Positions 3,172 through 50,391 of a stretch of 64,000 nt of DNA are shown here, in pieces; position 1 is the first letter of the stretch, and each line of letters opens with the position of its first letter. The notes under the pieces were generated by a model that saw nothing but the letters and a program-made list of their open reading frames with translations, had not been told where the DNA came from and made no database searches. The DNA is from Gnetum montanum (taxonomy: Eukaryota > Plantae > Gnetophyta). The translations under genes were made by a program, and so were the position numbers. Location: NCBI GenBank assembly GCA_015680685.1, contig MNCI01001625.1:217448-281447 (forward strand), written 5' to 3'.

Positions 3172-5303
3172 ATAGCTATATGCAGAATACATTGCATGCA
3201 AGCACCAAGCAAGGAACTACCATCCCACAGAAGCGCAACATCAACAGGACTTGCAACAGGAGAGATACTATACATCGTTGAAGGGCAAAGGACGCCATAA
3301 TGCTCCACCCGTCTTAAGTGAAATTGAGGGTGGTGAACCTATTTCTGTAGGTTCTCCACAAAAAAATGTTCCCCATCCTAATGATGGTGAGGAGGTGGTG
3401 TATCAAAACCTTCACTCCATGATTTGAAATCCTATTTTTGATCCCCATGAACATCAAGTGCTCAATGAGGGAACATGAAGACATGATGGGGGTGAGCATT
3501 CTAATCATCATCACAATCGGAGTCAGGACCATCGAAGAGAAGGTAGGAAAATTTGTCATGGCAATGGTTCTCCTTCTTCTTCACGTTCATCATCAAATTC
3601 ACCCTCTCCTTCAATATTAAGATGTAGTCATAAGGAACCTAACCATGAGGATAAGGGTAAACAACATGAAAAACCTTGACGAGAGAGTCGAGAGCGAGGA
3701 CAAGGGAACTCTAGAGAATCAAGGCATGGAAGAAGGGAAAGTAGGAAATCACATAGACATCATAGATGCTATGATAGAAATGACCACGAAGAACCCCTAC
3801 TTGCAACCTGAGGCATGTTAGACATCACGAAGGCTGTTAGAATTCCTCCAAAGCACCAGAAAGATAGCAAGATCAAGAGATTGGATATGAATAATATCCC
3901 ACGATTTGAGGGGGGATACAACACTGATCCTCAGAACCATTTACAAGAATTTCATGATGCATGTGCCTTGAAAAACATAGAGAACGAGTGGCAAAAATTA
4001 AAGTTGTTCCTAAGGAAACTCATAAATGAAGCGAAAAGCTGGTACTGGTCCTTAGAACCAAAATCCATTTGAAGGTGGAGTACGATGCTAGAACTATTTA
4101 ATGATAAGTATCAAACATGCTCCCAGGTATCCAAATTGCAAAAGAAAATCCAAGGATGGAAGCAGGGAACTCATGAACCCTTGGATGTTGCCATGGGCCA
4201 ATACTATGCACTTTTACATCATTTCCTAGGCCATGGTTACTTGTAGCAAGATCAACTATTCCATCTCATAGATGGACTTAGGCATGAAACCAGGAGAACC
4301 CTTGGAATGTATGCCCAAGGGAGATTATTAGAGCTTAGGTCACATCAGGTCCATAGATTGTTGGAACAAGTAGCTAAGGAAGAAGGAGAGCTATGTAAGA
4401 GAGAATGTACGAAAGAGTACAAGCATGATCCTTCCCTCTGAAAAAGGAAGGTAAGGTTCTATGAGGAGGAGGATGAGTCACCACTCGAAGAGTTGGTGAA
4501 TAGAAAAACCTTGCTACTTCAAAAAATAACAATAGAAGTGTCACCAAAGGTAGATCAAATGTGGGACTCCTTAGATAGTAGATTTGAAACCATCCTTAAA
4601 ATTGTAGAGGAGTCTATGGAGCAAAGTAGTGACTATGACAAAAAGAAAAAGAGGGATTTGGACCATGAACATAACAAAGATAAGGGTAAAATGGCTATCA
4701 CCAAAGAGGTTGTGGATTTTGATACAAACAATGATGGTGGATGTGAGATATGCCAGTATGACCATCCTAAGCGATGTTTCCCATTAATCTCACATCTGCA
4801 AGAGTCTAGGGTGTATGCACTTAACCCATGACTTAACAAAGAACAAGCACCCCAAAGGTTACCTTATCCCCAAGGTAACCCAAGGTAGTTTCACCAACCA
4901 TTAACATATTATCCAAGTGGAACTCCACCACAACCTATTCAGCAACAGCAGCAGTGGAAATACCCATAGTCATGGCGGATGCCACCGCCAAGTCAAAAAT
5001 ATCCTTATCGCCAAGTCAAAAATATCCTTATCGCCAATTCGATCCATATGGCTACTACGTGCAGTAGCCAATCTCTCCACATGACTCTATTGGTCATGTG
5101 ACTCCACAATGTCACTACTAAGCTTGGGAGTATTATAGGACTCCTTCTGCTAGGAGAGACACACCACACGCATACCATTCTCCAAATCCATCCACAACTC
5201 TCACACCGATAGCTCTGTTACCACCCGCTCTAGTAGTGCAAGGGGAACTCCCCACTCAACCGCAACAATGTAATGCTATGAGAGCTATAACCCTTCAACC
5301 CAC
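3172..5303 (+). pseudogene. gag: Athila-type gag (disrupted)
   Basis: IPRFEGGYNTDPQNHLQEFHDAC...KLKLFLRKLINEAKSWYWSLEPKSI*RWSTMLELFNDKY resembles Athila gag; homologous to 56800-58890 on the minus strand. Confidence 0.85.
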
Positions 5304-6541
5304 TGAAACATCATGAAATTTGAAGACCTCGATGATTCAACAACGTCTCGAGGCTTAGGTAATGATTTTCAACAAGTGGCACATCTCAACAACTTTTCTT
5401 TTTTTGGCTAAGGGTCTGCTATGCTACACTACACAACGTAGCATAATAGACTCCAGAAAATAGAATAGAACAAGGGATGCACAGTGGAAACACTTCAACT
5501 TTGCAAATTAGCCATGTTCAAAAATATTAACCTTTGTCGTACTATGTCATGTTACACTACGTAGCGTAAAGCAAGTAGCGTAGTGGACTTATCCACAGCA
5601 ACAAAGATAACAAAATTTAGTTAGTAGTAGTCACTACACCACGATACGCTTATCACAATGTAGTTGGCGGATAGTTTGTTCAATGCAAAAGACAAGGCCA
5701 AATGAACTATCTTCTTGAAGGATGGTTACGCTATACTATGCTTCAAAGCGTAATGCAGCGTAACACCACAAGCTTCAACTATAGAACATCAAGTCAACAA
5801 CATTTTGTGGTCCTAGGACACGTGTCATCTAAATCATGTTTTTCTCCTAACCCTAATCTTATAAATTTTCCAGTTAACAACGATCAAAGGGTTGACAATG
5901 GTTGGCAATTTTGAACATTGTTGGCAAGAAATTGGCGAGATGACGAGAGAGTTGGAAATAGAAGAGCATCGACAGTGACAGAGAGAAGCTTTTGGGTCAA
6001 ATATTTGAAGTTAGCAAAAATCTTGCTTCAAGCCTAAGTCCCTTGCACCCAGATTGGCTAGTGAACAAGGTAGATTGACCTTTGCTTGTTTCATCTCTGA
6101 ATAACTTATTGTTCTTGGCATGCACTTCGTCTACACCGAAGTCCTCTTGCAACCATTGTATTCAACATATTTGTCTATAAGTTCAATCCTAGATTTCGGG
6201 AAAACACATTCTCCAGAATTCAAGTTGTCACATTTTATTTACATTGATTTTACCATCATTTTGCATCATTTGCATCATTATCACTACCTTCAAGATTTGA
6301 TCTTGGAGCAGATCTCATTTTCTGGTCAACCAATATTATACCCTCACATTGAAATCATCATCTTGTGATCCGATCATTGCAAAACTTACTAATTAATTAA
6401 GTCCTTGTTTGATAGACAAGACCATTCAGGGCCCCTCAGATTCATTTTCTCTAGCACGGCCCTCACATGGATCCGAGGTTGGAACTGTGTACATGGAAAT
6501 CTGCTTGGTGTTTCTAGCAACCGATGTTTTCCATCGTTACA
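5304..6541 (+). repeat. 5' LTR of element A
   Basis: TGAAACA...ATCGTTACA; direct repeat of 20694-21949 (13 mismatches in the first ~117 bp, counted by eye). Confidence 0.95.
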
Positions 6542-9700: not shown

Positions 9701-10359
9701 CTCTTAAATAAAAAAATACAACATTGAGCCTCTATGACTTGTTGATGACATCACAAAAGCATTGTGAAGCCATGGTTCACATGTTAGCATCCATACCTGT
9801 GGACGAGAGCTTGCCAGTAGAGGAAGAGGCAATCCATTCGATTATGCTTCCTTCCACTGCTGAACAACCACAGTCTCCCGAATTGACATTTCATGACGAA
9901 TCCATTAAGGATGACCCAGAAAAGGGTCAGGTGACAACAACTTCCATGTTCATCACTATCTGGGTTAGCCAATACGTAATCTGGAAAGTACACATAGATG
10001 ATGGGGCCACTGCTAATGTCATTCCATATCCCATAGTGGATAAATTGGGCTTGATCGACCAGATCAATCCCACAACAACTTCATGCTTGAATTCATTTAA
10101 CGAGGCATGAGTGCAAGTCAAGGGAATGGTACACATCAACTTTGTAGAGGGGGATCAATTCCCCACAGATGTAGTATTTATCATCGTCAAGGAGATGCCC
10201 AGTTTCAACCTAATCATAGGGAGGTCTTGGTTAGCCCAATTAAGGGAAGGCTCATCACCCATTCATCAAGAGAACCACTTGCCCTATCCAAAGGGGGAAG
10301 TGATCATCCATGGTGATAAGATGACCCCTCAAGCAGTTAACAATGTTGAAATGGAATAG
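6796..10359 (+). pseudogene. gag-pro: gag and aspartic protease of element A (many stops and frameshifts)
   Basis: Gag core VFAMSLMGKALD*YHALPHSSISTLEDLLTQF (8120-8230); Zn-knuckle-like FCDYHQLCDH (~8920); protease KVHIDDGATANVIP (~9985) and FNLIIGRSWL. Start coordinate approximate. Confidence 0.88.
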
Positions 10360-11029
10360 GGTTTGGATATTGAAATCCTTGAAGATTAGACTCTTGTCCT
10401 AATAGTTGGATAGGCCAACACAGTGGCCAACGAAAGGCTAGGTTAGGTTGAACTACCCTTCCAACGAGAAGATGGTAGCGTAGAGGAATGCTGTAATAAG
10501 CCTCCTCATCCATACGCATCGCCAAATATAAAAACGATCAAGAAACAGCTACAGAGCTAGCAAATGAACATGTTAGCATGACATGTTATATCAGTCTGAA
10601 TTGTTTACTATTACGCAATTTATGCTCTTTCTTGTCACATTATTCTTGTTACGCTTTTTCATACGCATCTTGGCCCGAAATGGCCTTAAACTAGTTACGG
10701 CCTGCTACGACATAAAACTAGTAATACTGTTTATTCCTTTTCATATGCATCCTGGCCTGAAATGACCTTAAACTTGTTACGGCCTGCTATGGCCTAAAAC
10801 TAGAAATTTTGTTTATTCTTTTATGCTTACGATGGCCTAGCTTGAAATGGCCTTAAACTATTAATGGCTAGTAGTGGCCTAAAATGTGTAACCTTTCTAA
10901 CGATACATTTNNNNNNNNNNNNNNNNNNNNNNNNNNNNNNNNNNNNNNNNNNNNNNNNNNNNNNNNNNNNNNNNNNNNNNNNNNNNNNNNNNNNNNNNNN
11001 NNNNNNNNNNNNNNNNNNNNNNNNNNNTC

Positions 11030-14000
11030 TAGGATGACTAACAAACTTCGCATGATCTCGTCCTTAGTGAGCTCGGCCCAAATGATGTATCATAGATCAA
11101 CTCCAGCCTTTACCTTCCCTTTTTCCATGGGAGTCCACCATGGTGGTTCAGGAAAGAAGGAAGGGACAATAGTCTCCCCGCCAAGGAGGGTTATCTCTCT
11201 CTCAGGGGAAGCACTTACTATCACTTGCTCCTAAAACTTTTCATACGCTCTAGAAGCATCGATGACATCAAGGAATAGCCAGAGGGACTACGCTTCAACG
11301 CAGAATCCTTGTAATGTTGGCGGTAGGTAGCACATTCTCATTTATACATGTGCTTATGGTCTTTCTATGCCTACCCCCATTCCTAGACTCTTGTGCTAAA
11401 ATCATTCCAGTCTTGGTTCTTCTGGGCTAGGAGATCCATTTGCATCCGCTACTCGATGAGCTCATGATTGGCTTGGACATTGTTCCTGATGACCATCCAA
11501 TAACGGGCATAGTCAACCATAGCTATCCAACAATTCTCGTCATTGGTTTCTTGAGCTTGTAGAAATTTGTTCCGAGACTCAAGGTCCCCAACCTTAGCTG
11601 TTAGGGCCATTTTCTCCTTTTCTTTTTTCTGCAGCCTCTTCCAAAGATCTTTTTTGACGTTCTGACACTCTCATAAAGAACGGGCCAAGCGTAAGGCACA
11701 TTTATGCATCTCATCGTAAAGGCTATGTGGCACTTTAATCACTTTAGGTGAGGGTTTAGGGATAGTGTCTATGTCAATGAGCTTGTTGGGATCCCATCTG
11801 AGGCGAGATCCCATAACATAAAAAATAACAGTTAACAGAATAACATAATGTTGCACTTTCAACGATTCTTATGTAACAACAGTGATCTACCGATTTTAGG
11901 ATCGATTCACTCTAAGCAACTAACCATATCATTCACAATGCCTCCATAAAAGTGAATTTGTCAGGAGTCTCACCCCAATGCTGAGTTGGGGTTACTGACA
12001 AAGGTACACCACTGTTACCAGAAGTGCCTATTACGCAAACAAAACAGGTTAAACATAGCATGGTAGACAAAGCCAACTGAGACGTTACAACAATGCAAAG
12101 CTCCAATTCAAAAAACCCCCAGGGATAATAGTGGGAGGATTGCCCTCCGAGGAAAAGGTTAAACTTACAAGCGACACATCGCTCCTCCTTTTCTAGCTCA
12201 TCTAAAAGGATCTTGGCATCCTCTAGACCTATCTCTCCTTCAAGCATAGGAACTTGTGTGCTACCTATGTTATTAATCGAAGCCTCCTTTTCCAGAACTG
12301 GGGCCCCTTCACCATGCTATAAAACTATGGCCCCTTTTTTAGGGGTCAATTCCTCTACATCTTTCCCTTTTTCTATCAAACAACATAGTTAATCAAAACA
12401 AAATTTTATTTACTCTTTACAAGTGCTATGCGATGCAATGACATCTATACGTAGTGTAATATGCATAAACTAATCACACATTCTTCTACTTACTAGCCAA
12501 AGGAGCATTCCTATGGAACTTAATTCGTAATTTCCTTCCCTCTTCACCAGTCGGGCCAGAGGACTCCACAGCCAGATGATGCTTTTTTTTTGCTAAACTG
12601 ATGAATTCACTATTTTTTCTACCAAGAATTTCACCCTCCATGCACTGCCGATGTAAGAAGGGGATGCCCCACCTACGTTATCTTGTTCTCGCACATGAGG
12701 TGCGACCAGATCCTTAGTCGTTAGTGAAAAAAACTCTCTGATGCCTTCAGAAGGATCTTGGGATCGGACGGTGTGGAAGACCTGAGAAATCCACAGTTTT
12801 GAAATCTGGTTACAGTCTTGCTGCACCTAGACTCCATCCCTATGAACCACCAAGAATTTAGCAAAACACCAAAAGCAAGCTATGAAAAAGGCAAAATTCA
12901 TGTTAAAACAAGACTTACGCTTCTTGCGAAGCTTGACCATTTCAGCTTGCAGACCTTCAACAAGGTAACTAGACTAATTATACCATGTCCCCTCTTCCAT
13001 AACCTCCCACATGATCCAAGCCTGCTCTATTCCAAGGATTCTTCCTTGGGAGAGTAGTTTGGGGAAGGTACGCACTTAGAAGAGGGGGTAAATGATATTA
13101 GCCACCTCTAGCTTGATTTTATCAGCAAGGGTGCCTTTTGGTTTCATTTTAAGCCCTAGCCACTCCTCTATGTCCTTCTGATCCTTAGAAACTCTCTTTA
13201 ACCTTTCTTCCAATGGAATACCATCAAAAGGAATGCCAAAAATGTCAGCAAACAGTCAAAAATTAATATCAAAACTCAGACGCATGTTACGCATACGCAT
13301 GTGAAGACGCTCAGCTTATTCGGTAAAGGAGTCGACTAAGGTTAACATTTTAGCTGCTATGACATCGGGGGTTACAACTAGGAATAGCTCCATCAGTCGA
13401 GATTCTTCGAGGTTATTGGTTATGATAGCTGGGGCCACTCCATGGCAAAGCCAACATTGTGCTTCTTCCATGTCGCCATAATGGAAAAAGAGACTGCTCG
13501 TCTCATGCCCAGAGGCTATCACCATGACCTCTCGTGATTCCCTAAATATGAAAATAAAACAATAGTTTAGACAAAATAGCAAAATAATAAAATATTGTAC
13601 ACTATTCCCACTTCTTAAGGTCATAAAGTTGATCATCGTAGCATAGCTTATAGCGTCCAAAGGGCAAAGGAAATGTTGGGATTTTCTCTTGTACATCGTC
13701 AACTGTGATAGGACGATCCAAAGTCCACTCCTTATCCAGCCATCTAGAGTCTCTACACTTGGCAAAGAATCTAGCATAACAGATAGGGTAGTGTTGGATT
13801 TCAAATCCTAATTGTCCTAGGAAACTAGCACGCACATTGCTGATGGAAGTGAATTCCTTTATGGTCGTTTCGGCCATAGATAACATATCTGTATCACCTT
13901 AGAGACCATTAGCATCAATAAAAAGACTACATCATATAATGCAGATAATTGTTTATACTTGACGCAAAATCAAATAATAGTTAGCACATTAGAACATCTT

Positions 14001-15092
14001 GAAAACACTTACCTACTAGCATAATGCATGACGCTAGGTGGATTCTGAAAATAGATTGTGAGATGACGAGCCACGAACAATGTGTTGTAGGCATGATAAC
14101 AATCAAACCTGGGCATCTCCTAGATCCAAGATAAATGCCTCAAACGCTTGATGCTCTATTCGTGGTCTTTTCCCCTCATGATCTCGATTGAGCTGTCCAC
14201 CAGAAACATTAAGATACCCTGCATTGACCCAACCAGTAGCATCTCCAGAATGGCGATGGTTGTCTCAGTCCGTAGATGTGACCAAATAATTCTGCTGAAA
14301 TTACATAACAAAAACTACAAGAACTCCCATGCATCTTTCCAGAACCAAACCACCTCTTCCCCTACATGAGCATGGGGAGGAGGAACATTGGCCGTGGGGA
14401 CATGTAAATAGCACAGAATGCCCACAATGTCTAGGATGATCAAGACGGGCCTTAGCGTAACCCTTTACAATGAAATGCACTACCATTAGAAAAGTAGTAT
14501 AGACATATCAACAACGCTGCAACAATCGAGGTTCTCATTACCTTGACTCCCAGAAAATTACATGTTATGCTAAAGATGCATTACCAAAACTGTGCAAACC
14601 CTTGCGATGGTGCAAGGTTAGTCTCTGACAATGGTGATAAAGGTAACATCGCATATTGCCCTAGTGTAACATGAAACCATCGTGGGCAAGGCAATGAAAC
14701 CCCATTTGCATTATACAAGAGTACAAAACCTAGAATCCTGACCAGTTGCATATTGTGTTTACACAATATTGTCCAAAATCACCCAAACCCTTGCGAAGAT
14801 GTAAGGTCTATCTCTAACAACAGCGATAGGGGAAATATTACAAACTCTAGTTGTGTAACTAGCATAGGCAAGTATCGACACCCAATGCAATGCACATCTT
14901 CGGAAAAAATACAATTACGATGTTGTGACAATGAAAACAACCATCATACAAAGAAGGTAAAAAAATGACTTACTGGGCAAGTGGAGTAGCCTCCCGAGTT
15001 TTGACTCGAGCCTTTGAAATTCACCCCAAGCTTTCCTGCACTTCATCGATCCTCACCAACTTAGCATGTTTTCCTTTGATCTTCGGTGCCAT
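11030..15092 (-). pseudogene. Spliced antisense accessory gene of element A: FCP1/NIF-like phosphatase domain + PMD-like domain + coiled-coil tail (decayed)
   Basis: Predicted exons 15092-14974 (MAPKIKGK..), 14462-14013, 13926-13603, 13541-12919, 12839-12494, 12372-12169, 12027-11937 and ~11812 to the gap. GTAAGT donors at 14973, 14012, 12918, 12493 and 12168 with phase-compatible AG acceptors. Homologous exons at 36207-39567. The frame in exon 5 and the last acceptor are uncertain. Confidence 0.8.
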
Positions 15093-15638
15093 GGTCACAC
15101 CTGAATAATCTTTGTAAAATCATCTACTTATGCTTTCCTTCTGCTTCAGCCTATCTCAGCCTCGCGATGTTTACAATTTACTTTGAGGACAAACCATCTA
15201 GTTATGAAAGTAATGATGAAAACTTGCCATTTTCATGTCCAATTAACGTGGAAATTTACCAAAACGTAGACATGTCAGTTTGACATGAAGCGTGGAGATC
15301 GTACCATTAATCTCATAGATATCACATTGATGATGGTCTGAAAAGACCCTAAACTAATGCATAGGTTATCATCTCATAATCTTGTTGCATTAACTATGGT
15401 CTACACAAAATCATAAATTAGCTATTTTGACATGCTAGACATGCCACATTATACCCTTCATCATAGTTGGCAGAAACCTTACGCTAATACCTAGGAAACC
15501 TGGCTTGCTGTTTTCTTGCAAACTGTGTACATTGTAATGGTCCACTAAGACCTTAAACTAGTAACCTTTTTGACACATACCTTTAAAACCTTCTACCATT
15601 GCACCATGTTGATAAAAATAATGTAACGACTTCTATTC

Positions 15639-18600
15639 TTGGCGGTTTTGTATGTCAATTCGCAAATGGACGAAGCTTTACTTTCACCCCTAGCCATAAC
15701 AGGCCCATATGGGAAAATTTTTAGGCAGCTTGATCTTGCAATGATAGGAATTGATGCTTCCTCCTATTACATAACCATAGCAGCCTTAGAAGTATCCCTA
15801 GACTGGCCTGAACATTTGGCCTGAATCCTAGACTTGGAGGTTGGTGATGTGATCAAGGATTCCCTCACTGAGGTCTCTATGATTATGCACAAAGGGGAAA
15901 GAAAAACTCTAAAGGTTAGTTCCCTCCCTGACCAACAAATGCAGAGCGATATATCTCAAGTGCTCCAAGATAACATTACAATGTTTTCATGATCATATGA
16001 AGACATGCCAGGTTTAGACCTACGACTGATACAACACAAGATCGTGTTAAACCCAAATATCAAAGTGGTTAGACAGAAAGCACAAAAGATTAACCCTGAA
16101 ATCATGTTAGCAGTGCATGATGAAATCCCCAAGCTATATTAGGCTAGTTTCATCCATGTGGTTGATTATTGGGATTGGGTGTTAAACATTATTGTTGTTT
16201 CTAAGAAAATGGGAGGAATACGCATTTGTATAGACTTCCATGATTTCAACAAAGTAGCGATTAAAGATAATTTCCCATTACCAGGTATTGACCAACTTAT
16301 TGATACAACCACTGGACATGCGTTAATATCCTTCATGGATTATTTTTTTGAAATATAATCAAATCTGTATCAACCCAGAACGTCAACTGAATACAACTTT
16401 CATGACCCTCTGGGGAACTTTCTGTTATACCATGATGCCCTTTAGGCTAAAAAATGCTGAAGAAACTTATCAATGCACCATGACATATATCTTTAGAAAT
16501 TACCTCTTAGAGAGCTTGAACGACTATGTAGATGACATAGCTGTTAAATCTAGGAAGTCGGAAGATCACCTAAAAGACCTAGAGTTAATCCTTAAACGAT
16601 GTCTTAGGCACGACCTAAGGCTCAACCCTAAAAAATGTGTATTCAAAGTTGAAACTGGATGCATGTTGGGGTTTGTAGCATCAGAGGCTAGCATACAAGT
16701 CAACCCTGACAAGGTTAAGGCCATTGTTAACCTAACACCACCTACAAACCTCAAGGAACTACGTGGGTTATAGGGTAGGTTACAATTGATTAGGAGGTTC
16801 ATCTTGAAGTTGACAGACAAATTACATCCTATGCAACATTTGCTCAAGCAGGGGGTTAAATTCAAATGGATCGAGAACTGCCAGTGTGCATTTGACAATC
16901 TAAAAGAAGAGCTGCTACATTTTTCAATGATTTTTCCACCACAAAGGGATTAGCCTTTCTACATCTACCTGGTGAGTTCAGATGTATCTATAGCTGCATT
17001 GTTGTATCAAAAGAGGGATGACGGGTTAGAAATCCCTATCTATTATCTAAGTCATGCTCTATTCACATACGAAATAAGTTATAATGAAGTAGAGCATAAT
17101 TTTTTAGCATTGGTTTTTGCACTCAAAAAATGTAGACACTATATTTTTCGTATGCAAGTTAACATAATTTGCAAGAATAACATTTTACGCGCAATCACGA
17201 ACAATTTATATGAGAGCAGTAGGATAGCCTGCTGGAAAGCCATCATAGCAAAATTTGACTTGCACTAGCTGGTAACATCACCTGTTAACAATCAGGCCAC
17301 GATAGAGCCTGAGTTTCCTAATGAACATGTACATAGTTTAAGCCCTGTATCAACAGGACTCGAAGCGAAGTTATACTTTTTTGGAGCTTTGACTACTAAG
17401 GGCAGAAGTGCCGCCACCATCATTACACTTTCCCCTAAGGATGTTCGCCCATTGGCTTATTATCTGGTATTTCCTTGTATGAACAATGTGGCAGAATATG
17501 AAGGACTCCTCAGGGGATTATTGGCAACCAAAGAACTAAACATCCAACACCTAGCAATCTGAGGTGATTCGATGCTCATTGTCAATCAAATCATAGAAGT
17601 CTATGACTGCAAAGCTGTGCATTTATAGACCTACTAGGATATGGCTAAATATCTTTTGAAACAATTCACAACGACTAACATCCAACACATGCCGCGTAAT
17701 AAGAACATTGTAGCTGATGTACTAGCTACATTAGCTCTAAACAGGGTACCACATTTGTTTGCCACCTGGCCTGCTTTAATGTTGGAATGTACAGATCTTG
17801 TCATCCAAGTAGTGAAAATCTCTTTTCTAACTAGGGAAGGGATGCCAAAATGGTACAATAACATTAAAATCTACCTTCTACATGGCGAACCACGACACGA
17901 GTTAACGCCTGCACAAAAAGACGCAATCTGCTAGCGTGCCAGGTAATACGTAAACATCGGAGATAGTACTCTATGTAGATGCTCTTTTGATGGAATATCA
18001 TTAACCTACATTAATAGTAACCAAGCACAAAGGATAGTTAGTAAAGTCCATGAGGGCCTATGTGGAGGACACATAGCCCCGTGAGCCATGGCCGCTAAAA
18101 TTAGATGCTTAGGGTATTACTAGTCGTACATGGAATGAGATTTCCTTACCAAAGTTAAGATATGTGACACATGCCAGTGTTATGTAAATCTAATACATGT
18201 GTCACCCACTAAGTTACATACCACAAAGATCACTTAGCCATTCCAACGATGGGGACTAGACATCATAGGCCTCATCACGCTTAAGTCTTCCACAGGACAT
18301 AGCTTCATAGTTACTACCACCGAGTACTTCACGAAGTGGGTCAAGGCTATTCTCCTATGAAAGACTACATCTCAACAGGTCTGCCATTTTATCTTGGATA
18401 ACATAGTAATAAGGTTTGGGCTTCCCATGACTATTGTGACCAACAATGGACCACAATTTAGTAGCACTGAAACAAAATCATTTTTCAATAACCTTGATAT
18501 TAAACAATCTTTTTCCTCACCTTATTACCTGCAAGAAAATGGTCAAGTAGAGGCAAAAAACAAGATGGTCATCAATTTACTAAAGAAAATGCTCAGCAGC

Positions 18601-19070
18601 AACAAGAAATGATGGCATAAAAAAATCCTCTATGTGCTATGGGCCTATCATACGACATGCAAAACATCTACCAGTAGGACATCCTACAGCCTAGAAGCAG
18701 TGCTGCCTCTTGAACTATAGGTTCCCTCACTGTGAATGAAACTCTTCACGGTTATAAATGAGACTCAACACAGCAATTCCAGGATAGTGGATCTAGACTC
18801 AATGGAGGAGAAATACATCCAGACACTTGAAAACATCGAAAAATATTAGGACAGGTAGAAGTAGAAGCATCATCGCAACCTACATCAATGACCGATTAAG
18901 AAAGGAGACTTATTTCTTAAGGCAGTTTATCAACTAGTGAAAAAATTCTTTGCAAGCTAGGAAGGCCCCTTCCTGGTCGTCGATGCATACGGCAATGGAG
19001 CATTCAGGCTAGCGGACATTGATGGCAACGAACTTCCAAATCCAGTGAATCACATGTACCTGAAGTAGTA
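15639..19070 (+). pseudogene. pol: pol of element A: RT, RNase H, additional (archaeal-type) RNase H, integrase
   Basis: RT: IRICIDFHDFNK, YTMMPFRLKNA, YVDDIAVKS. aRH: NNVAEYEGLLRGL..GDSMLIVNQ. INT: HEGLCGGH, TEYFTKWV, YLQENGQVEA. Confidence 0.95.
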
Positions 19071-20680: not shown

Positions 20681-20693
20681 AAAGAGGAGCCAT
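20681..20693 (+). other. Polypurine tract of element A
   Basis: AAAGAGGAGCCAT immediately before the 3' LTR. Confidence 0.7.
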
Positions 20694-21949
20694 TGAAACA
20701 CCTTGAAATTTCAAGACCTTGATGATTCAGCAAAGTCTTGAGGCTTAGGCAACGATTTTCAACAAGTGGCACATCTCAGCAAGTTTTCTTTTTTTGGCTA
20801 AGGGCTTGCTACGCTACACTATGCAATGCAGTGTAATAGAATCCAGATATATGAATAGAATAAGGGATTCATAGTGGCAACAGTTCAGCTTTGCAAATTA
20901 GCCATGTTCAAAAATCTTAACCTTTTCCGTACTACATCATGTTACGCTATGTAGCATAATGCAGTGTAAAGAAACTAGTGTAGTGGACTTATCCGCATCA
21001 ACGAAGATAACGGAATTTAGTTAGTATTAGTCACTACGCCATGACATGCTTCCTAGCATATCATAGCATAGTCACGAGACAGTTTGTTCAGTGCAAAAGA
21101 TAAGGCCAAATGAACTATTTTCTTGAAGGATGGTTACGCTATACTACGCTTCATAGCGTAATGTAGCGTAACACCACAAGCTTCAACTACAGCGCATCAA
21201 GTCAATGGCATTTTTTGGGCCCAAGACACGCGTCATCTAAACCATGTTTTTCTCCTAACCCTAATCTTATAAATGCTCCAGTTGACAATGATCAAAGGGT
21301 TGGCAATGGTTGGCAATTTTTAACATTATTGGTAAGAAATTGGTGAGACGATGAGAGAGTTGGCAATAGAAGAGCATCGACAGTGACAGAGAGAAGCTTT
21401 TGGGTCAAATATTTAAAGTTAGCAAACATCTTGCTTCAAGCCTAACTCCCTTATGCCTAAATTGGCTAGTGAACAAGGTAGATTGACCTTTTCTTGTTTC
21501 ATCTTTGAATAGCTTCTTGTTCTTGGCATGCACTTCGTCTAAACTGAAGTCCGCTTGCAACCATTGTATTCAACATATTTGTCTATAAGTTCAATCCTAG
21601 ATTTTGGGATCACACATTCTCCAAAATTTGAGTTGTTGCATTTTATTTACATTGATTTTACAATCATTTTGCATTTTTTACATTGTTATCACTACCTTCA
21701 AGATTCGATGATGGAGCAGATCTCATTTTCTCATCAACCAATATTATACCCTCACATTGAAATTTTCATCTCATGATCCGATCATTGCAAAATTTATTGA
21801 TTAAGTAAGTCCTTGTTTGATAAACAAAACTGTTGAGGGCACCTCAGATTCGTTTTCTCCAGCACAGACCTTGCACGGATACGAGGTTGAAACTATGTAC
21901 ACGAAAATCCACTTGGTGTTTCTAGCAACCGACATTTTTTATCGTTACA
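20694..21949 (+). repeat. 3' LTR of element A
   Basis: Direct repeat of 5304-6541, followed by the TSD CCCAC. Confidence 0.95.
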
Positions 21950-22099
21950 CCCACTACTGGTTCTAACAACCACACAAAGAGAAGACCTTTCTTCAAAACC
22001 AACAACCCAAACAAGCTCTCACAACCACAAGAGGTTGAGCCTCCGAACATTTCTCCGTCAAATAAGGCTTCAGAGCTCCCTTCAAACCAAAACAGAAAA

Positions 22100-22630
22100 C
22101 TCAACGTATACTATTATGTTAACACATACTATCACTGATTGGATCAAAGAGGGCCACCTTCCCAGGAAATTATCTGATCCTAGAAGTCCTTTAATCTATC
22201 TCCAAGTCGCTAGGAATGAACCATGTAAAGCTCTTCTGAACTTAGGTTCTGGAGTCAACTTAATATCACAAGAGATGTATAAAGCCTAGAATCTGCCTCC
22301 ACTAAAGAAGAGTAATATTCACTTAGATCTGGATGACTAGTCCATCACTGTTCCCTTGGGACTAGTGGAGGACATTGTTACCACTGTGTGTGGGTGGTCA
22401 TACCTAGCTAATTTCCTAGTCAACAATGATAAACGGGACTTCCCATTAATAATGCAAAGGGCATGGCTAAGTACCGTGAATGCGTGCCTAAGAATCCGCA
22501 ATCTTTCCTTGGAAATATCTAAGGAAAACACTTGTGGAAAGATCGAGAAGAAGAAAGTTCCATGCATCACGTACAGTGATACAGGGTGTGATTGCGTACA
22601 GGAATGTTTAGCATTTCCTGCATGCAATCG
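22100..22630 (+). pseudogene. pro: Athila-type aspartic protease (disrupted)
   Basis: LPRKLSDPRSP...KALLNLGSGVNLISQEMY...GLVEDIVTTVCGWSYLANFLV..PLIMQRAWLST; the sister copy has LLDLGSKVNL. Confidence 0.85.
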
Positions 22631-25626: not shown

Positions 25627-26910
25627 AAACGACACTATTCCAACCTTTCAAAGAAAAAGCATTATGACCTATTAGAGTTACTTAGCAAATTTAGACAAAA
25701 CATCTAGTCGAAGGTGATATTAGCCTCTGTTAAAAGCTTGAAGGTTTTTATCAAAATTAGCCTAAGTAATTTCATCACAACCTTGCATAAAATTTCATTA
25801 TGACCAATTGCAATTTCTTTTACAAATTTAGAGAAAACTTCCTAAGTTAGAGGTGAAATTAGCTTCTATACAAAGCTCTTAGGTGTTTTCTTAAATTAGC
25901 TTAAGAAATTCCATAAAAACATTAATATCATAACCAAAAGCATTATGACCAAAACTATATCTTATTCTAAATTATACATAAATTTTTTAAAAAAACATCT
26001 AAATTATTCATAAATTTGGAAAAAAAACCAAACATAAGTTTATAAAAAGAATCTAAATTATGCAAGGCATGCATAAATTTAGAAAAGACATCTAAATTAT
26101 GTAGAAATTTTGATAAAGCATGATAAACTTAGAAAACGCCATGAAGCCAATGCCATGATCTACACAACCTTAGAAAAAACTCATAAAAAATTCATTTTAA
26201 ATCCAATTGGAGTCATTTCACATCTATTAGAAAGCTGAAGAAAAATCCTATATAGCCATAACAAGAAAATAGCGAAAACTGTGGTTTTTTTCCTATGAAA
26301 ATTTCACAAATCTACATGACAGTACAAAAGTGGTAAAAATAGCCTAACTGCGCAATGTTAGGAAATAGTCATAACTCCCCTATTTCAAGGACAACTTAAA
26401 CAAGACAACCACCATCAAGAATATTAAAAAAGTGGCTACAAATCCATATTCTTTGATTTCACAAATATGTAGCTATTTTACCAACAAAAATACACAACTT
26501 TGCTTGCTTTTTCAAAGTAAAACTTCAAAAATCCCAAAGCCCAAAATTCATATAGGCATTAAAATGGTAAAAATCACCAAAACCATTACAACTCATTTAA
26601 ATTCACATCAAAATAATGGGGTATGATTTCCTAAGGCCTATATTTAAAAGAAAATACAACATTACCCCAATATTTTAGGAAAAGAGCATGAAACAGCAAG
26701 CCCTATTTTCAAAACCAAATTTGCAAAAGCTAAAGTGACAAAACAACCATAGATCTACATGGAAGCAACCAAAAAAGGAGGTGTTATTTTCTTAGAATTA
26801 TAAGTTAATATCCCCATTAGAGTAGATATGAGAAAACAACCCTAACACTTGGAAAGTAAAAATAAGAAAAGTCACAAAAACCAATGGTAGAAATAGGTAG
26901 AATAGCCTAC

Positions 26911-27038
26911 CTTGGAGTAATGAAAAATGGGGCTTGGATGGAGATAGTCCTTGGAACCTCTAATAACTCCCTTGAATGCTTCTCCATACTATATATTTTG
27001 GGGTTATTTCTCTTTCCCCCTCTCTATTTTGATGCCAT
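26911..27038 (-). pseudogene. Exon 1 of the antisense accessory gene in element B
   Basis: ACC ATG GCA TCA AAA...; MASK*RGGKRNNPKIYSMEKHSRELLEVPRTISIQ; phase-2 donor AG|GTAGGC at 26910; homologous to 39437-39567. Confidence 0.7.
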
Positions 27039-27599
27039 GGTAGGCTCAACATTGTGAAAGAGGATAATTGGAAGAAGATGAGAGTTCTGCGTTGGCTGTA
27101 GGGGAGATGTAAAGCTTCCATGTTGAAGATTAGTTGTGGTTGCCAAAAAATATCTACCAAATATCTCCATGAATGCATTATTGCTAAAAGATAACAATTG
27201 TGATCAATATTTGTAAATTTTGACATATAAAACCAACCTAAACCTAAACAAAACCCTAGCTGGTAATTTAGTGCACCATGACTACAAGTGCACTCAAGGA
27301 AAAAAGGGGAAAGATTACTTCATGTTGGTTTTATGGGGGAAGGAAGAAACCATTGCACTTTTCAAAATTCTAAATTTTTGGATGGTGGCTCCACCTTGCA
27401 CAGCTCGTTTTAACCAAACTTACCAATTTCATCACTTAAGACATTATGACAACCTTACCCCCCACCCCCGTAGGTGCATTCACACTAGGAATACCATGTC
27501 CAACTTAGAAGTATGTTGTTTATCATTTTTAAAATTTGTTAGCATTTCAATATATTTCTATTTTAAGTAACTCAAACTTACCTTTCTAAACCTCAGGTT

Positions 27600-30450: not shown

Positions 30451-30939
30451 TGAAAATCAAAATGATTAACCTATGGCCTAGATACTTATATTGCTTTATG
30501 GAAATGATTGACATTATATGGCCTCTACATAGCCCCATATGTTCGTTATTTGTCTTATTACATCTCTATTTGTCTTTTTTTGGTCTTTAAAGAGGTATCA
30601 AATAGTGGGGTTTGACCTTCCTTGACCACCATTTGAAAACATATGACCATGACCTGCTAAGGCCTTAAACTAGCATCATGGCCCACTAAGGCCTTAAACT
30701 AGCATCATAGTTTACCAAGACTATAAACTAGCGTCATAGCCTACTAAGCCCTTAAAATAGAAATATTGTGACCTCTATTGGTCATTTTTGGCCTTAATCC
30801 TTATATTTTCCCTTATTTAACCCTTATGGATCCTTTGTTTGCGTCTATTGCACCTTTTCATCTCATTAATCGCCTTGATTTCCTTAGATTTGCACATGTT
30901 TTGTGGCATTTTTAATAGTATTTATTTACTTTTACATAG

Positions 30940-33900: not shown

Positions 33901-34444
33901 AGAAGTAAGCGACAAGGCCATCATCAACTTTCTCAAGAAGATGCTTAATAATAGCAACCAAAAGTGGTATGAGTGGCTTATCCATGCACTATGGAAATAT
34001 AGAAAAACCTATCCCATGGCAATCATCATGATCCCTTATGACCTTATTTATGATTTTGAAGCTATTTTACCTCTTGAATTACAAGTATCATCACTCCAAG
34101 CAACCTTGACAAACTTCATCAACGACAAGCAAAGCAAGGAGTTTTGGATAGCAACATTGAATTTAGTGGAAGTGTGATGTATGCAAGCACTTTCTCAAAT
34201 TGAGAAATATCAAGAGAGGTAGCAATGAAAACATCACCATAACCTAACCATGCACAAGATCAAGGAGGGGGACCTCATCCTCAAGGCCATTTGTGAACAT
34301 GTGGACAAATTCCTAGCCAATTGGGAAGGGCCTTTTATTATCACCAAAGGTTATGGAAATAGAGGATTCAAAATAGTCAACATGGATGGGAATGAGCTAG
34401 GAAATCAAATAAATCATTCCTTTCTAAATCAATACTACATGTAG
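30940..34444 (+). pseudogene. pol: pol of element B (RT-RH-aRH-INT)
   Basis: VVVPKKNG, YTMMPFDLIN, YYVDDIVVKS, CTNNIVEYEGLIRG, ATEYFTKWV, QANGQVE, NWEGPF. Confidence 0.93.
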
Positions 34445-34694
34445 TAGACCGATCATCAACAAGTGAGCCTACTTTCAATGGTCCACTACAACCTTAAACT
34501 GCAACACAACCCACCAAGGAATTAAACCAGTACCATTGCCTACCACAATCTTTAACTAGCAACATTGGTAACCTAGATAGCCTAATTCACATGTGGAATC
34601 TATGCATTATAAAATTATAATATGTAGTGGTGTTTTGTATTCTTTGTCAGTGCCTCTCAGGTCAATCCTCTAAACACCAACAAATAAGGATCAC

Positions 34695-36206: not shown

Positions 36207-39200
36207 TAATAGGAACCTTTACCCCATCAGTAGGGACTCAAAACAAGTCATGAAAGAGGCCCACACCAATTTCCATGTTCACCTTCACATCATAAATGAT
36301 GTTCCTAAAATGACCAACCTTCTCATCAAAGGTGTCGATGGCATGTAACATCTCAACAGTAAGAATGGAAGGGATAGGTACCATAAATACATCAAGCAAA
36401 CCTACATGCTAGATGTTTGCTTGAACATACCTAGGCATCTATTCTTTTAATAGATCATGTGCTCGTATCACCTCTCCAAACTTTATCATGAGGCTATCCT
36501 CATGATGTGAACCTAAATGTGGTATAGTGACATTAGCCAAGGTGGAAGATCCTATGAAGCAACAACCAAAGCTTATCATAAACATGAGAAATTTTAATAA
36601 CCAAGCAAAGTAATAGAACACTTAAATTTATAGCCATGAAACACTACAAGCTATAGCATTTACATTTACTTTTTCTTTTCTTCATTAGTATGGTTTGAGT
36701 AGAGGTCCCAACTACAAGGGCCTAATCCATGCTATTGGTGTCTACCCACTAGTTGTGCATCATCCTATCATCCTTACACTTCTTGTACACAAGGTTGAAT
36801 CTTGAGGCAAATGCATCAAAGTCCCCTCTTAACTATTGATATACAGTAGTTGTAATTTGAGAAATCATGGTGAATTTTTCTAAAGTAGTTTAAGCCACTA
36901 CCCAGATTTGATTGTTGAGGATCAAGCCTTGATCATTGACCTTGTATCTATAGGAATGTTGTAAAATTGATGATGTTAGGGAAGGTAGTTAAGACAAAAG
37001 AATATAAACATTAAAATAATCATGCTTACCCTTATAAATGAGACATAGTATTAGGTGGGTTCTAAAATAACATGTGGGTTCTATGCACCACCATCAAAGT
37101 ATTTTCAACATTATACTAGTTATTCTTTGGCATCATCTAGATCTCGATAAGGTAACGTGGACTGATGGCATCTACTAGTCCCACTACTATCTTAGCAAGT
37201 GGCTTTTCAATAATGAATTTGATAATCAGGTCAAATACCTAAGGCACTATGGTCTCCACTACAACCCTAGCTACATCTAGAGATAAGCATGACCATAGGA
37301 TCACAATGAAGTTCTTAAGGAGGTAGGCAAGGAATTCCCTTGTCCTAGGCAAGAACCACAATGAGAGCTTTCCTAAAAGCATGTCATGTGATGGGGTATT
37401 GGTCTTGGGATGACCAATGTAGCATAGGATACCCACAAACTCCACAATGATGAGGGTGAACCTTGAAAAGACCCTACATGAAGCAAAGCAAAAACATTGT
37501 GACCAATTGAAATTTCTTAGCAAATTTGGAAAAAAAATCTAGTTGGAGATGAAATTAGCCTCTATAAAAAGCTCTAATATGTTTATTTGAATTAGCTTAA
37601 GAAATTCCATAAGAAATAATTATTACAACTTTGCATAACCTTACATTATGACCAATTGAAATTTCTTAACAAATTTAGAAAAAACATCCTAAGTTGAAGT
37701 TGAAATTAGCCTTTGTAAAAAGCTCTAAGTTGTTTATCTAAATTAGCTTAAGGAATTTACAAAAAAATGTTATTACAACATTTCATAGCCTTATATTATT
37801 GAATTAATAAAAAAATTTGTAAAAAACATCTAGTCAAAGGTGAAATTAGCCTTTGTAAAAGGCTCTAAGGTGTTCATCTAAATTAGCCTAAGAAGTTCCA
37901 TAAAAGCATGATTACCATAACCAAAAAATCACAGCAAAAAGATTATATCCAAAACTAAACCTTGGTCTGAGTTATGCATAAATTTGGAAAAAAAATTTAA
38001 ATCATGTACAAATTTTAAAAGGTAAGGATAAGTTCAAAAAAAACATCTAAATTTTTCAAAGCATGCATAAATTTATAAAAAAGAAACATGTAAGCTGTGC
38101 ACAAATTTTGAAAAAGCATCATAAACTTAGAAAAACCCATGTAGCCATAGTAAAAGATTTCTAAAAATAAAAAAAGCTTTTAAACTTATTAAAAAAATTA
38201 AGCATTACTTTTACATATTTATAAAATAAAAACATAAGTTATACATATCAACCACTTCCATTTACAAATGGGTAATATGCTTTGACCATAATTTTTCCTT
38301 GTTCACACAGCCATAGCTAAAAAATTTATTAAAAACTCAATTGTGATCTAATTTCAATTATTCCACCATGAAAATAATTCTAAAATTATGAATCTTATAG
38401 TGAAAACCATTATAACTGAAAATGTATAACCATATCTAGATAAAACATAACCAAAATTTAGCCAAAATAGTAGCTATCGCCATTAACCTCTTTTTACAAA
38501 AGGTTGGTAAAAATTCATTTATACTCCAAACAGAGTAATTCCACATTTTTTGAAAGTCTAAACCAAGCCCTATGCACCCATGTATAGAAAAAAGTCAAAA
38601 CTTTTGCTATTTATGCAAAAAAAAATTCTACAATTTGGACAATAATTTGAAAAGCCACAACCATCCTTATTACACATGCTTAGCAAAAAACATTCATAGA
38701 AAATTCATTCTAAGCCCAATTAGGGTGATTCCACCTCTTTTGGAAAGCTAAAGCCAATAAATAATTAGCCATGAGTAGAAAATAGCCCAAACCTTTGGCA
38801 TTTTCTTAGAAAAATTTTCCAAGTTTACATAAAATTACAAAAATGGCATGAGAAACCTAACTACACAATGGTAGAAAAATAACCATAACTTCATCATTAA
38901 AAAGCTAAATTAAATGAAAGAATAGCCATCAGAAAGATTAGAAAAAGATCTACAAACCTATATTATCAAATTCTAAAAGTATGTATCTATTTTATTAATA
39001 AAAAATACACAACTTTACTTGATTTTTCCATGTAAAAAGCTAAAAAGTTAAACCCAACTTAACATAGCCAAAATAGTTGAAACAATCGATACCCATTAGC
39101 AGGAATACCAAAATAATGTCATAGGATTTTGTTGAAATTTAATTTTGATGAATCCTTTGGCCTAGATTTGAAAAAATGGCCATACCCCAAAATTTTGGGA

Positions 39201-50131: not shown

Positions 50132-50391
50132 CTACATGTAGCCAACAATCATCAACAAGAAATCTTACTTTCAATAGTGTACTATGATCTTAAACTAGCA
50201 ACATAGCCTACTAGGGCCTTAAACTAGTACCATGGCCTACCACAACTTTAAACTAGATACTTTGGTGACCTAGATAGCTTGATTCACATGTGGGCTATGT
50301 GCATTGTAGCATAATAATATGTAGTGGTGTTTTGTATTCTTTATCAGTGCCTCTCAGGTCCATCCTCTAGACACCAACAAGGATGAGTCAT

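What the first reader, a model, noticed from the sequence alone, without database searches (positions are those of the whole stretch)
14013..14462. Retrotransposon-borne FCP1/NIF-type (HAD) phosphatase-like domain, apparently a pseudophosphatase
Seen: minus-strand exon 2 of element A translates (through decay stops) as RPVLIILDIVGILCYLHVP...VGEEVVWF.KDA.EFL*FLLCNFSRIIWSHL...YHAYNTLFVARHLTIYFQNPP. The diverged copy in element C (37473-37030) reads RFTLIIVEFVGILCYIGHP...LSLWFLPRTREFLAYLLKNFIVILWSCL...YNVENTLMVVHRTHMLF*NPPNT. Known: plant FCP1-homology/NIF (PF03031) proteins follow the pattern KLLVLDxNGLL...VFKRPxxxEFLxFCFxxFxVGVWSS...YNxSNTLLLDDSPxKALxNPPxT. Order and spacing match in both copies. 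Inference: the element captured an FCP1/SCP-like domain. Motif I is altered (DIVG, EFVG) and the acidic DD pair is lost in both copies, so it may be a catalytically dead decoy or binder of phosphoproteins, e.g. the Pol II CTD. I do not know of this domain as standard LTR-retrotransposon cargo.
Basis: partly seen in the sequence, partly recalled or inferred. Interest (0 to 1): 0.95.

Follow-up and report, generated by a model that had tools for sequence, protein, structure and literature searches.

The report
Dead phosphatase-like exon inside plant retrotransposons
Two old, broken plant LTR retrotransposons each carry, on the strand opposite their own genes, one exon that clearly descends from the NIF/FCP1 family of protein phosphatases but lacks the residues needed for catalysis; the plant transposon papers I read do not describe such a passenger.

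Summary
The minus-strand readings at 14013-14462 (copy A) and 37030-37473 (copy C) translate as quoted and are 34% identical over about 146 residues. Both are bounded by matching splice sites in the same phase.

The NIF interpretation is also confirmed, but only with a profile of the right subgroup. Pfam, PDB and large-database searches on the stop-free pieces found nothing. A profile built from 42 natural NIF domains with a D-x-N-G first motif scores A at 37.4 bits and C at 35.7 bits. In 1631 six-frame test windows, only the four overlapping these exons score (20-37 bits); the next best scores 5.7. A tool hhalign run gives 94% probability (E 1.2e-7).

Copy A lies inside an LTR pair, between protease and reverse transcriptase of an Ogre/Retand-type Tat element. 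The family is present in thousands of contigs in two species.

Both copies lack the second motif-I residue (Val), the motif-III Lys (Arg) and the motif-IV Asp-Asp pair. A non-catalytic domain is therefore likely. Its function is untested.

Both copies are dead here (3 and 5 stops). RNA support is negligible. The scan has noted this gene on other DNA of the same genome (35 notes, two follow-ups).

The parts
14013..14462 (-). Copy A of the NIF-like exon (150 codons, 3 in-frame stops at 14315-14317, 14156-14158 and 14120-14122)
   Evidence: Translation. Subgroup NIF profile: 37.4 bits with X at the stops; best six-frame test window 37.2 bits, E 2.2e-10. Stop-free pieces 14318-14464 and 14159-14314 rank 2nd and 3rd of 2798 pieces, in collinear order.
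14420..14434 (-). Copy A, former motif I: L-D-I-V-G where relatives have l-D-x-N-G and canonical NIF has l-D-L-D-E
   Evidence: Alignment to the subgroup profile; coordinates.
14054..14086 (-). Copy A, former motif IV region: N-T-L-F-V-A-R-H-L-T-I where relatives have N-T-l-L-i-D-D-s-P-y-K
14463..14469 (-). Splice-acceptor-like site of copy A (TGTAAAG, AG at 14464-14463)
   Evidence: Position and phase match copy C.
14006..14012 (-). Splice-donor-like site of copy A (GTAAGTG)
   Evidence: Family contig depth drops over 13910-14031.
37030..37473 (-). Copy C of the NIF-like exon (148 codons; in-frame stops at 37239-37241, 37137-37139, 37116-37118, 37062-37064 and 37032-37034)
   Evidence: Subgroup profile: 35.7 bits with X at the stops. 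Stop-free piece 37242-37538 scores 28.8 bits, E 1.4e-7, rank 1 of 2798. ESM Atlas: the three best named clusters are all PF03031. hhalign 94%.
37431..37445 (-). Copy C, former motif I: V-E-F-V-G
37071..37103 (-). Copy C, former motif IV region: N-T-L-M-V-V-H-R-T-H-M
37474..37480 (-). Splice-acceptor-like site of copy C (CATGTAG after a pyrimidine tract)
37023..37029 (-). Splice-donor-like site of copy C (GTAAGCA)
5300..6541 (+). 5' LTR of element A
   Evidence: 86% identical over 1260 nt to 20690-21949.
20690..21949 (+). 3' LTR of element A
9712..10356 (+). Protease-like region of element A. The label rests on the D-D-G-A-T-x-N motif and on similarity to another element at 63631-63896. There is no Pfam hit.
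15828..19065 (+). Element A pol: RT (RVT_1), RNase H (RT_RNaseH, 16954-17265), second RNase H (RVT_3, 17269-17931) and integrase (rve)
   Evidence: Pfam; homology to pol of B and C.
11040..14012 (-). Remainder of the antisense region of element A: further minus-strand reading pieces downstream of the NIF exon. Its exon model was not verified here.
   Evidence: Frames. No Pfam family at E<=1-10 for twelve pieces. Family depth peaks at 13666-13909 and 13361-13482.
37504..37905 (.). 151-bp tandem repeat (2.8 copies) directly beside the acceptor of copy C

Best explanation
These are two decayed copies of one exon of an accessory gene carried backwards inside Tat-clade (Ogre/Retand-type) Ty3/gypsy LTR retrotransposons.

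The exon encodes almost a whole NIF/FCP1-homology (HAD) domain. The domain descends from the NIF subgroup whose first motif reads D-x-N-G.

In the element lineage the domain has lost the chemistry of a phosphatase:
- The residue two places after the nucleophile is Val in both copies.
- The motif-III Lys is Arg in both.
- The Mg-binding Asp-Asp pair is gone in both.

Structural landmarks are kept: the hydrophobic first strand, E-F-L, W-S, N-T-L and N-P-P.

What is shown: the homology, the location, the orientation, the splice-site conservation, the motif states, and the high copy number in two species.

What is inferred: in intact family members the domain acted as a non-catalytic fold, either a binding or scaffold module or a mimic of a host D-x-N-G NIF protein, within a protein made from an antisense, spliced transcript. 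In this window both copies are dead relics and do nothing.
For: Homology to NIF:
- The subgroup NIF profile was built from 42 unique metagenome domains, all D-x-N-G. A sample of eight source ORFs was confirmed as PF03031 at 55-145 bits.
- It scores A at 37.4 bits and C at 35.7 bits.
- Of 1631 six-frame test windows, only the four overlapping the two exons score (37.2, 32.8, 28.1, 20.3 bits); the next best is 5.7.
- Tool hhalign of the stop-free pieces against 14 subgroup proteins: probability 94.2%, E 1.2e-7, first motif included.
- Against 138 canonical NIF sequences: hhalign score 37.3, P 1.6e-5. The maximum was 22.4 in 300 column shuffles and 21.6 in 330 random genomic reads.
- Reverse search with a two-row A+C profile: the top 54 hits are all true NIF sequences before the first reversed decoy.
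- ESM Atlas: the three best named clusters are PF03031.

One origin: A and C group together (SH-aLRT 99) on the D-x-N-G side of the tree.

Borne by the element:
- LTR pair around copy A; pol domains on the opposite strand.
- About 6400 contigs laid per DNA run in two species, with depth peaks on 14337-14458 and 14032-14153.
- Splice sites are conserved between A and C.

Motif states.
Against: - Pfam's own NIF model gives no hit at E<=10 on any stop-free piece. PDB sequence searches are blank too.
- Both copies are pseudogenes, so motif states could in principle reflect decay.
- The Asp-Asp replacement differs between A (A-R) and C (V-H).
- No intact copy was retrieved.
- RNA support is negligible: 21 and 30 reads, nearly all under 95% alike, and no splice joints.
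- The AlphaFold model of the longest piece was an uninformative all-helix model at pLDDT 65.
- No functional test exists.
Confidence: 0.8

Rival explanations
1. The family's intact copies encode a working phosphatase, and the missing catalytic residues seen here are decay in two dead copies.
For: Copy A keeps the nucleophile Asp, and both copies keep the motif-II Ser. Both copies are clearly decayed. The residues replacing Asp-Asp differ between A and C.
Against: - Val at the position two after the nucleophile is shared by two lineages that are only 34% identical.
- Arg for the motif-III Lys is also shared.
- V-G-I-L-C-Y over the old active-site loop is the best conserved block between A and C.
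- Among the 40 best-supported family differences from copy A, none falls in the motif I or motif IV codons, although depth is highest there. A further 241 rows were not shown.
Confidence: 0.12
2. The exon has long since stopped coding. It survives as part of an antisense transcript or regulatory RNA region of the element, and the peptide similarity is a fading remnant of an old capture.
For: No intact copy was seen. Only a few RNA reads map, from diverged copies. Reviews consider regulatory roles for antisense transcripts of plant LTR retrotransposons (PMC7264820).
Against: A and C retain protein-level similarity (E 2e-12) and splice sites, but no detectable DNA similarity. This is the signature of past selection on the peptide. 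The coding frame also has the fewest stops of six in both copies.
Confidence: 0.05
3. It is a fragment of an ordinary host NIF gene, broken up by nested transposon insertions, and not part of any element.
For: The window is a dense nest of elements. Cellular D-x-N-G NIF genes exist.
Against: - Copy A lies inside one LTR pair.
- A second, diverged copy lies upstream of the RT of another element, with repeats beside it.
- The stretch is laid by thousands of contigs per run in two species.
- No other exons of a host NIF gene are nearby.
Confidence: 0.02
4. The resemblance to NIF is due to chance.
For: Pfam and PDB searches on the pieces were blank.
Against:: independent profiles, shuffles, genomic nulls and decoys all separate these two loci from the background by 15-30 bits.
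Confidence: 0.01

Closest known systems
NIF / FCP1-homology domain proteins with a D-x-N-G first motif (Pfam PF03031 members sampled here from metagenome contigs, e.g. L041, L074, L054, L046, L134)
   Same: - The alignment covers nearly the whole domain (profile positions 4-150 of 164).
- Shared landmarks: the hydrophobic strand before motif I, Gly after it, E-F-L helix, W-S (motif II), N-T-L, N-P-P-x-T.
- Domain length is the same.
- The two-row A+C profile scores these proteins up to 43.5 bits for one domain and 54.9 bits for a two-domain protein.
   Different: Cellular members keep Asp, Asn, Lys and D-D-S-P-x-K without exception. The element copies have Val for Asn, Arg for Lys and no Asp-Asp. 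They are encoded antisense inside a retrotransposon and sit on a very long branch.
Canonical NIF phosphatases (SCP1/CTDSP, FCP1, CTDNEP1/Dullard, giant-virus NIF) with D-L-D-E-T
   Same: Same Pfam family. hhalign is collinear from the segment before the E-F-L helix to N-P-x-N (score 37.3, P 1.6e-5).
   Different: The D-x-D-x-T first motif and the acidic motif IV are absent. Similarity is much weaker than to the D-x-N-G subgroup. Pfam's model does not reach any stop-free piece.
UBLCP1 (PDB 3SHQ), the nearest solved structure to the D-x-N-G subgroup
   Same: It is the only PDB sequence hit by the subgroup profile (E 4e-7). It is therefore the best available structural template for the fold.
   Different: UBLCP1 is an active proteasome phosphatase with an added ubiquitin-like domain. 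There is no direct hit from the element pieces.
Antisense additional ORFs of plant Tat-clade elements (Retand, Grande gene23, RIRE2; Transposase_28 domain)
   Same: An accessory coding region antisense to gag-pol inside a Tat-clade LTR retrotransposon, with tandem repeats beside it (PMC7264820, PMC11963269).
   Different: Those lie between pol and the 3' LTR, are read as single ORFs and mostly carry Transposase_28. This one lies between protease and RT in element A, has intron-like boundaries, carries a NIF domain and gives no Transposase_28 or PMD hit.
Ogre elements' gap between gag-protease and RT (a spliced intron, 274 bp on average)
   Same: Element A has the RT, RNase H, second RNase H, integrase order of Ogre/Retand, and a break between protease and RT (PMC6317226).
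   Different: Here the break is about 5.4 kb (10356 to 15828) and holds the antisense gene. REXdb's survey and the supplements held here mention no NIF or phosphatase domain.

Membership tests
Pfam NIF (PF03031) / FCP1-homology domain | Reaches Pfam's own model threshold | tested here: not met
   No hit at E<=10 for five stop-free pieces. The tool does not accept a read-through, so the whole exon could not be scored against Pfam's model.
Pfam NIF (PF03031) / FCP1-homology domain | Significant profile similarity to proven PF03031 members over the domain length | tested here: met
   37.4 and 35.7 bits against a profile of 42 unique metagenome NIF domains (eight source ORFs confirmed by Pfam). 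Six-frame null maximum 5.7 bits. hhalign 94.2%, E 1.2e-7. Decoy test 54/54.
Pfam NIF (PF03031) / FCP1-homology domain | Motif I D-x-D-x-(T/V): nucleophile and acid/base Asp | tested here: not met
   A reads D-I-V-G-I; C reads E-F-V-G-I.
Pfam NIF (PF03031) / FCP1-homology domain | Motif II Ser/Thr | tested here: met
   W-S in both copies, at 14276-14290 and 37287-37301.
Pfam NIF (PF03031) / FCP1-homology domain | Motif III Lys | tested here: not met
   Arg in both copies at the aligned column.
Pfam NIF (PF03031) / FCP1-homology domain | Motif IV acidic pair (D-D or D-N) | tested here: not met
   A-R in copy A and V-H in copy C.
Pfam NIF (PF03031) / FCP1-homology domain | HAD Rossmann-like fold | tested here: inconclusive
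   AlphaFold on the 78-residue piece with a two-row alignment gave an all-helix model, pLDDT 65. It was not used for fold search.
D-x-N-G subgroup of NIF | D-x-N-G first motif, and D-D-S-P-x-K with N-P-P after it | tested here: not met
   Gly, N-T-L and N-P-P are kept. Asn is Val, Asp-Asp and Lys are lost. The domain is a descendant of the subgroup, not a regular member.
Tat clade, Ogre/Retand type (REXdb) | Second RNase H between RNase H and integrase | tested here: met
   RT_RNaseH at 16954-17265, RVT_3 at 17269-17931, rve at 18361-18609. The criterion comes from PMC6317226.
Antisense aORF of Retand-type elements | Located between pol and the 3' LTR and encoding Transposase_28 | tested here: not met
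   In element A it lies between protease (up to 10356) and RT (from 15828). No PF04195 hit on any piece.

The most novel reading that the evidence does not exclude
A whole lineage of Ogre/Retand-type retrotransposons, abundant in at least two related plant species, maintains a spliced antisense gene between protease and RT. The NIF-derived, catalytically dead domain of that gene acts as a mimic or binder in host phospho-signalling (for example Pol II CTD or silencing-related phosphatase partners) to favour the element. This would be the first retrotransposon-encoded pseudophosphatase in plants.
Probability: 0.3. Interest if true: 0.8.

Novelty: new variant of a known kind. Interest (0 to 1): 0.62.

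Why it matters
Extra genes in plant LTR retrotransposons are known, but almost none has a recognisable origin or function. Here the origin of one is pinned to a specific cellular protein family, and the lost catalytic residues give a testable idea: binding or mimicry rather than enzyme activity. The gene also sits in an unusual place, inside the gap between protease and RT that Ogre elements splice out. That links accessory-gene expression to the element's own splicing. The D-x-N-G NIF subgroup has, to my knowledge, no characterised member, and none was found or searched for here. The element's copy therefore points to a host pathway that transposons may target.

Tried and rejected
Sequence searches that found nothing:
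- Pfam on five stop-free pieces of the exon: none.
- Pfam on twelve other minus-strand pieces of the antisense region: no PMD, no Transposase_28, only sub-threshold noise. The neighbouring note's 'PMD-like' reading got no support here.
- phmmer of the 78-residue C piece against 1.8 billion representatives: one hit, a 3793-residue bacterial repeat adhesin scored over 12 repeats. I judged it spurious.
- The search for homologous proteins with the C and A pieces: no candidate shares enough 5-residue words. This says nothing about longer or shorter kin.
- PDB phmmer/hmmsearch with the pieces and with their two-row alignment: rhodopsin and insulin-like receptor noise only.
- The search for related loci in metagenome contigs with the A/C alignment: 93 pattern matches, none confirmed.

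Other blank or uninformative results:
- ESM Atlas with the 36-residue C-terminal piece of copy A: no usable hit.
- AlphaFold of the C piece: uninformative, so not taken to fold search.
- A canonical-NIF HMM on the stop-free pieces: the C piece ranks first, but at only 8.6-9.6 bits. The canonical D-L-D-E-T profile penalises this domain.
- Element B has no copy of the exon.
- RNA: no splice joint and no reads at 99% or more.

How the searches were done:
- Tools were given stop-free pieces by reference only.
- Read-throughs with X at each stop were used only inside scripts.
- The A+C two-row alignment was used as a search profile.

Full report
**1. The observation**

It gives four stop-free pieces:
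- 14318-14464 (49 aa)
- 14159-14314 (52 aa)
- 14123-14155 (11 aa)
- 14012-14119 (36 aa)

These are separated by three stop codons, with no frameshift.

The second copy reads in one frame from 37475 to 37035. It has four internal stops, plus one more two codons before its donor.

- In A, an AG at 14464-14463 precedes the unit and GTAAGT at 14012-14006 follows it.
- In C, a pyrimidine tract and an AG at 37475-37474 precede it and GTAAGC at 37029-37023 follows it.
- Phase is the same in both.
- Lengths are 450 and 444 nt.

The two copies align over their whole length with two small gaps and 50 of 146 identical residues. tblastn gives E 2e-12. blastn at word size 9 finds no DNA match between them. 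In both copies this frame has the fewest stops of the six (3 against 6-11, and 5 against 9-16). These are therefore two diverged, dead copies of one coding exon.

**2. First searches were blank**

- Pfam on the stop-free pieces gave nothing at E<=10.
- PDB sequence searches gave only noise.
- The 1.8-billion-representative phmmer search returned only a bacterial repeat adhesin, scored over 12 repeats, which I judge spurious.
- The word-indexed protein search found no candidates for either piece.
- The only early lead was the ESM Atlas feature search with the 78-residue C piece. Its three best named clusters were all PF03031 NIF (0.89, 0.88, 0.87; 174, 181 and 151 shared features), and all ten best hits lay in one clan.

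**3. Test against canonical NIF**

I fetched real NIF genes by scanning viral contigs for a back-translated D-L-D-E-T-L-V-H pattern. I confirmed ten as PF03031. I then used their alignment to collect 120 more NIF proteins.

Inside scripts only, each exon was read through with X at each stop.
- hhalign of the two-row A+C alignment against the 138-sequence NIF alignment gave a local score of 37.3 (P 1.6e-5, 79% probability). The match was collinear from the segment before the E-F-L helix to N-P-P.
- 300 column shuffles gave mean 12.3, sd 2.3, maximum 22.4. The reversed query gave 11.6.
- 330 random 150-codon reads from this same window gave a maximum of 21.6.
- C alone scored 37.8. A alone scored 18.6, which only 3 of the 330 random reads reached.
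- In the reverse direction, a profile of the two rows ranked 54 true NIF sequences ahead of the first reversed decoy (best E 1.3e-6).

All 138 of these NIF sequences carry an intact Asp-x-Asp first motif, nearly all as D-L-D-E-T. That explains why the first motif of the element copies did not align locally.

**4. The right subgroup**

- The scan gave 120 loci.
- 52 open frames scored at least 45 bits on the NIF profile.
- From these I cut domain segments that begin at a first motif of the form [D/E]-x-[N/D/S]-G; this pattern cannot match canonical D-L-D-E-T. That gave 51 segments, 42 of them unique.
- All 42 unique domain segments read D-[L/V/I/M]-N-G at the first motif.
- Pfam confirms eight of them as NIF at 55-145 bits.

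The two-row A+C profile hits these proteins at up to 43.5 bits for a single domain (L041, aligned 7-148 of 151) and 54.9 bits for a two-domain protein (L046).

A profile built only from the 42 natural domains was then run, with filters off, against all 2798 stop-to-stop pieces of the window in six frames:
- The top three are C's long piece (28.8 bits, E 1.4e-7) and A's first two pieces (9.6 and 8.6 bits).
- They fall in collinear profile positions.
- The next piece scores 5.3 bits.
- With X at the stops, A scores 37.4 bits and C scores 35.7 bits.

In 1631 sliding 150-codon windows over all six frames, only the four that overlap these two exons score (37.2, 32.8, 28.1, 20.3 bits; E 2e-10 to 3e-5). 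The next best is 5.7 bits.

The tool's own hhalign of the stop-free pieces against 14 subgroup proteins gives 94.2% probability, E 1.2e-7, over 72 columns including the first motif. BLASTP of the C piece against L041 alone gives E 3e-5. NIF descent is therefore established.

**5. Motif states**

| Position | Subgroup (invariant) | Copy A | Copy C |
|---|---|---|---|
| Motif I | D-x-N-G | D-I-V-G | E-F-V-G |
| Arg before the E-F-L helix | Arg | lost | lost |
| E-F-L | E-F-L | kept | kept |
| Motif II | W-S | kept | kept |
| Motif III | Lys | Arg | Arg |
| Motif IV | D-D-S-P-x-K | A-R-H-L-T-I | V-H-R-T-H-M |
| N-T-L and N-P-P | present | kept | kept |

The best conserved block between A and C is V-G-I-L-C-Y, which lies on the former active-site loop.

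Established knowledge of HAD phosphatases says the Asp-Asp pair holds the Mg ion and the residue two after the nucleophile is the acid/base. By that knowledge, the shared Val and the missing acidic pair argue for a non-catalytic domain. This is inference from two dead copies.

Among the 40 best-supported positions where nearly all family contigs differ from copy A, seven fall in this exon. None falls in the motif I or motif IV codons. However, 241 further rows were not shown.

**6. Context**

Element A:
- It has LTRs at 5300-6541 and 20690-21949 (86% identical).
- On the plus strand it has a gag-like region (similar to two other elements) and a protease-like D-D-G-A-T-x-N stretch at about 9900-10000.
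- It also has RVT_1, RT_RNaseH, RVT_3 and rve.
- That order is the Ogre/Retand arrangement of the Tat clade in REXdb (PMC6317226).
- The NIF exon lies antisense in the 5.4-kb gap between protease (to 10356) and RT (from 15828).

Copy C and element B:
- Copy C lies 5.7 kb upstream of the RT of a second, more decayed element.
- A 151-bp tandem repeat sits directly beside its acceptor.
- About 850 bp on its other side, the 3' LTR-like block of element B ends.
- No protease or further antisense exons could be found for C.
- Element B, a relative of C, is cut off at 25626/25649 and has no copy.

Laying public runs on 13300-15100:
- About 6400 contigs per run were laid in two species labels.
- Depth peaks on 14337-14458, 14032-14153 and 13666-13909. 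It falls in the intron-like stretch 13910-14031.
- Two RNA runs gave 21 and 30 reads. Nearly all were under 95% alike, and there were no splice joints.
- So this copy shows no sign of expression. The family shows at most traces.

In a tree, A and C join each other (SH-aLRT 99) on a long branch. They fall on the D-x-N-G side of the branch that separates canonical NIF (97-99). Their place within that side is unresolved.

**7. Comparison with what is known**

- Reviews of additional ORFs in plant LTR retrotransposons describe antisense ORFs between pol and the 3' LTR, without database similarity or with Transposase_28 (PMC7264820, PMC11963269).
- REXdb reports PMD, Transposase_28 and Athila ORF-1 as the main extra-ORF domains. 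It gives a 274-bp average gap between gag-protease and RT in Ogre. It only looked for single ORFs of 250 codons or more (PMC6317226).
- None of these texts, nor the REXdb supplements as held, mentions a NIF or phosphatase domain. Full-text searches for retrotransposon with NIF or FCP1 terms found nothing relevant.
- The nearest solved structure to the subgroup is UBLCP1, 3SHQ.

The scan's own notes hold 35 entries with the same reading on other DNA of this genome. Two follow-ups reached the same conclusion. I treat these as leads, not evidence.

**8. Verdict**

The observation and the NIF reading are confirmed, and 'retrotransposon-borne' holds. 'Pseudophosphatase' is likely but rests on dead copies. 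The decoy or CTD-binder function is untested.

The main refinement is that the closest relatives belong to the D-x-N-G subgroup of NIF, not to FCP1/SCP enzymes.

That step is referred.

Noticed in passing
window 14120-14122 and 37137-37139: One in-frame stop of copy A and one of copy C fall in the same aligned column. All seven stops inside the two exon bodies are TAG; only the stop next to C's donor is TAA. Chance overlap is about 8% for 3 x 4 stops in 146 columns. The transition-dominated decay seen in the read table could explain both observations.
   Followed up: partly
window 5010-5300 and 22000-22626 versus 57018-56042: The two flanks of element A are contiguous in another copy of a different repeat at 56042-57018 (minus strand). 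Element A therefore inserted into an older repeat. That repeat's terminus at 25626 also cuts off element B.
   Followed up: partly
window 25649-36177 versus 37484-51894: Elements B and C are collinear relatives (66-78% identical). C carries an extra 3.6 kb (46452-50082, including an N run near 49350-49690) inside its integrase end, and a local duplication 45893-46450 / 46451-47015.
   Followed up: partly
window 10880-11030: An assembly gap (run of N) lies between the protease side and the 3' end of the antisense region of element A. An 82-bp-period repeat sits just before it (10643-10853).
   Followed up: no
window 14498-14860: A diverged internal duplication of about 190 bp lies directly beside the acceptor of copy A. 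It is seen only at peptide level (34-48% identity), and Tandem Repeats Finder finds nothing. Copy C has a clear 151-bp array at the matching place.
   Followed up: partly
loci L037, L052, L069, L075, L103, L117, L121, L129 and others: Many plant-like metagenome contigs of the D-x-N-G NIF subgroup end their open frame right after L-L-N-P with a Val (GTN) codon, which suggests a conserved intron there. The element exon and several other contigs (L054, L126, L046) run through that point.
   Followed up: no
window 13361-13909 and 14215-14580, run X11: The few RNA read pairs of one transcriptomic run lie almost all with the first mate on the plus strand. In common stranded libraries that would mean minus-strand RNA, which is the strand of the antisense gene. 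There are only 30 reads, mostly under 90% alike, and the library type is unknown.
   Followed up: no
window 11452-11670 minus strand: A Lys/Glu-rich, coiled-coil-like reading piece lies near the 3' end of the antisense region. It has no Pfam family.
   Followed up: partly
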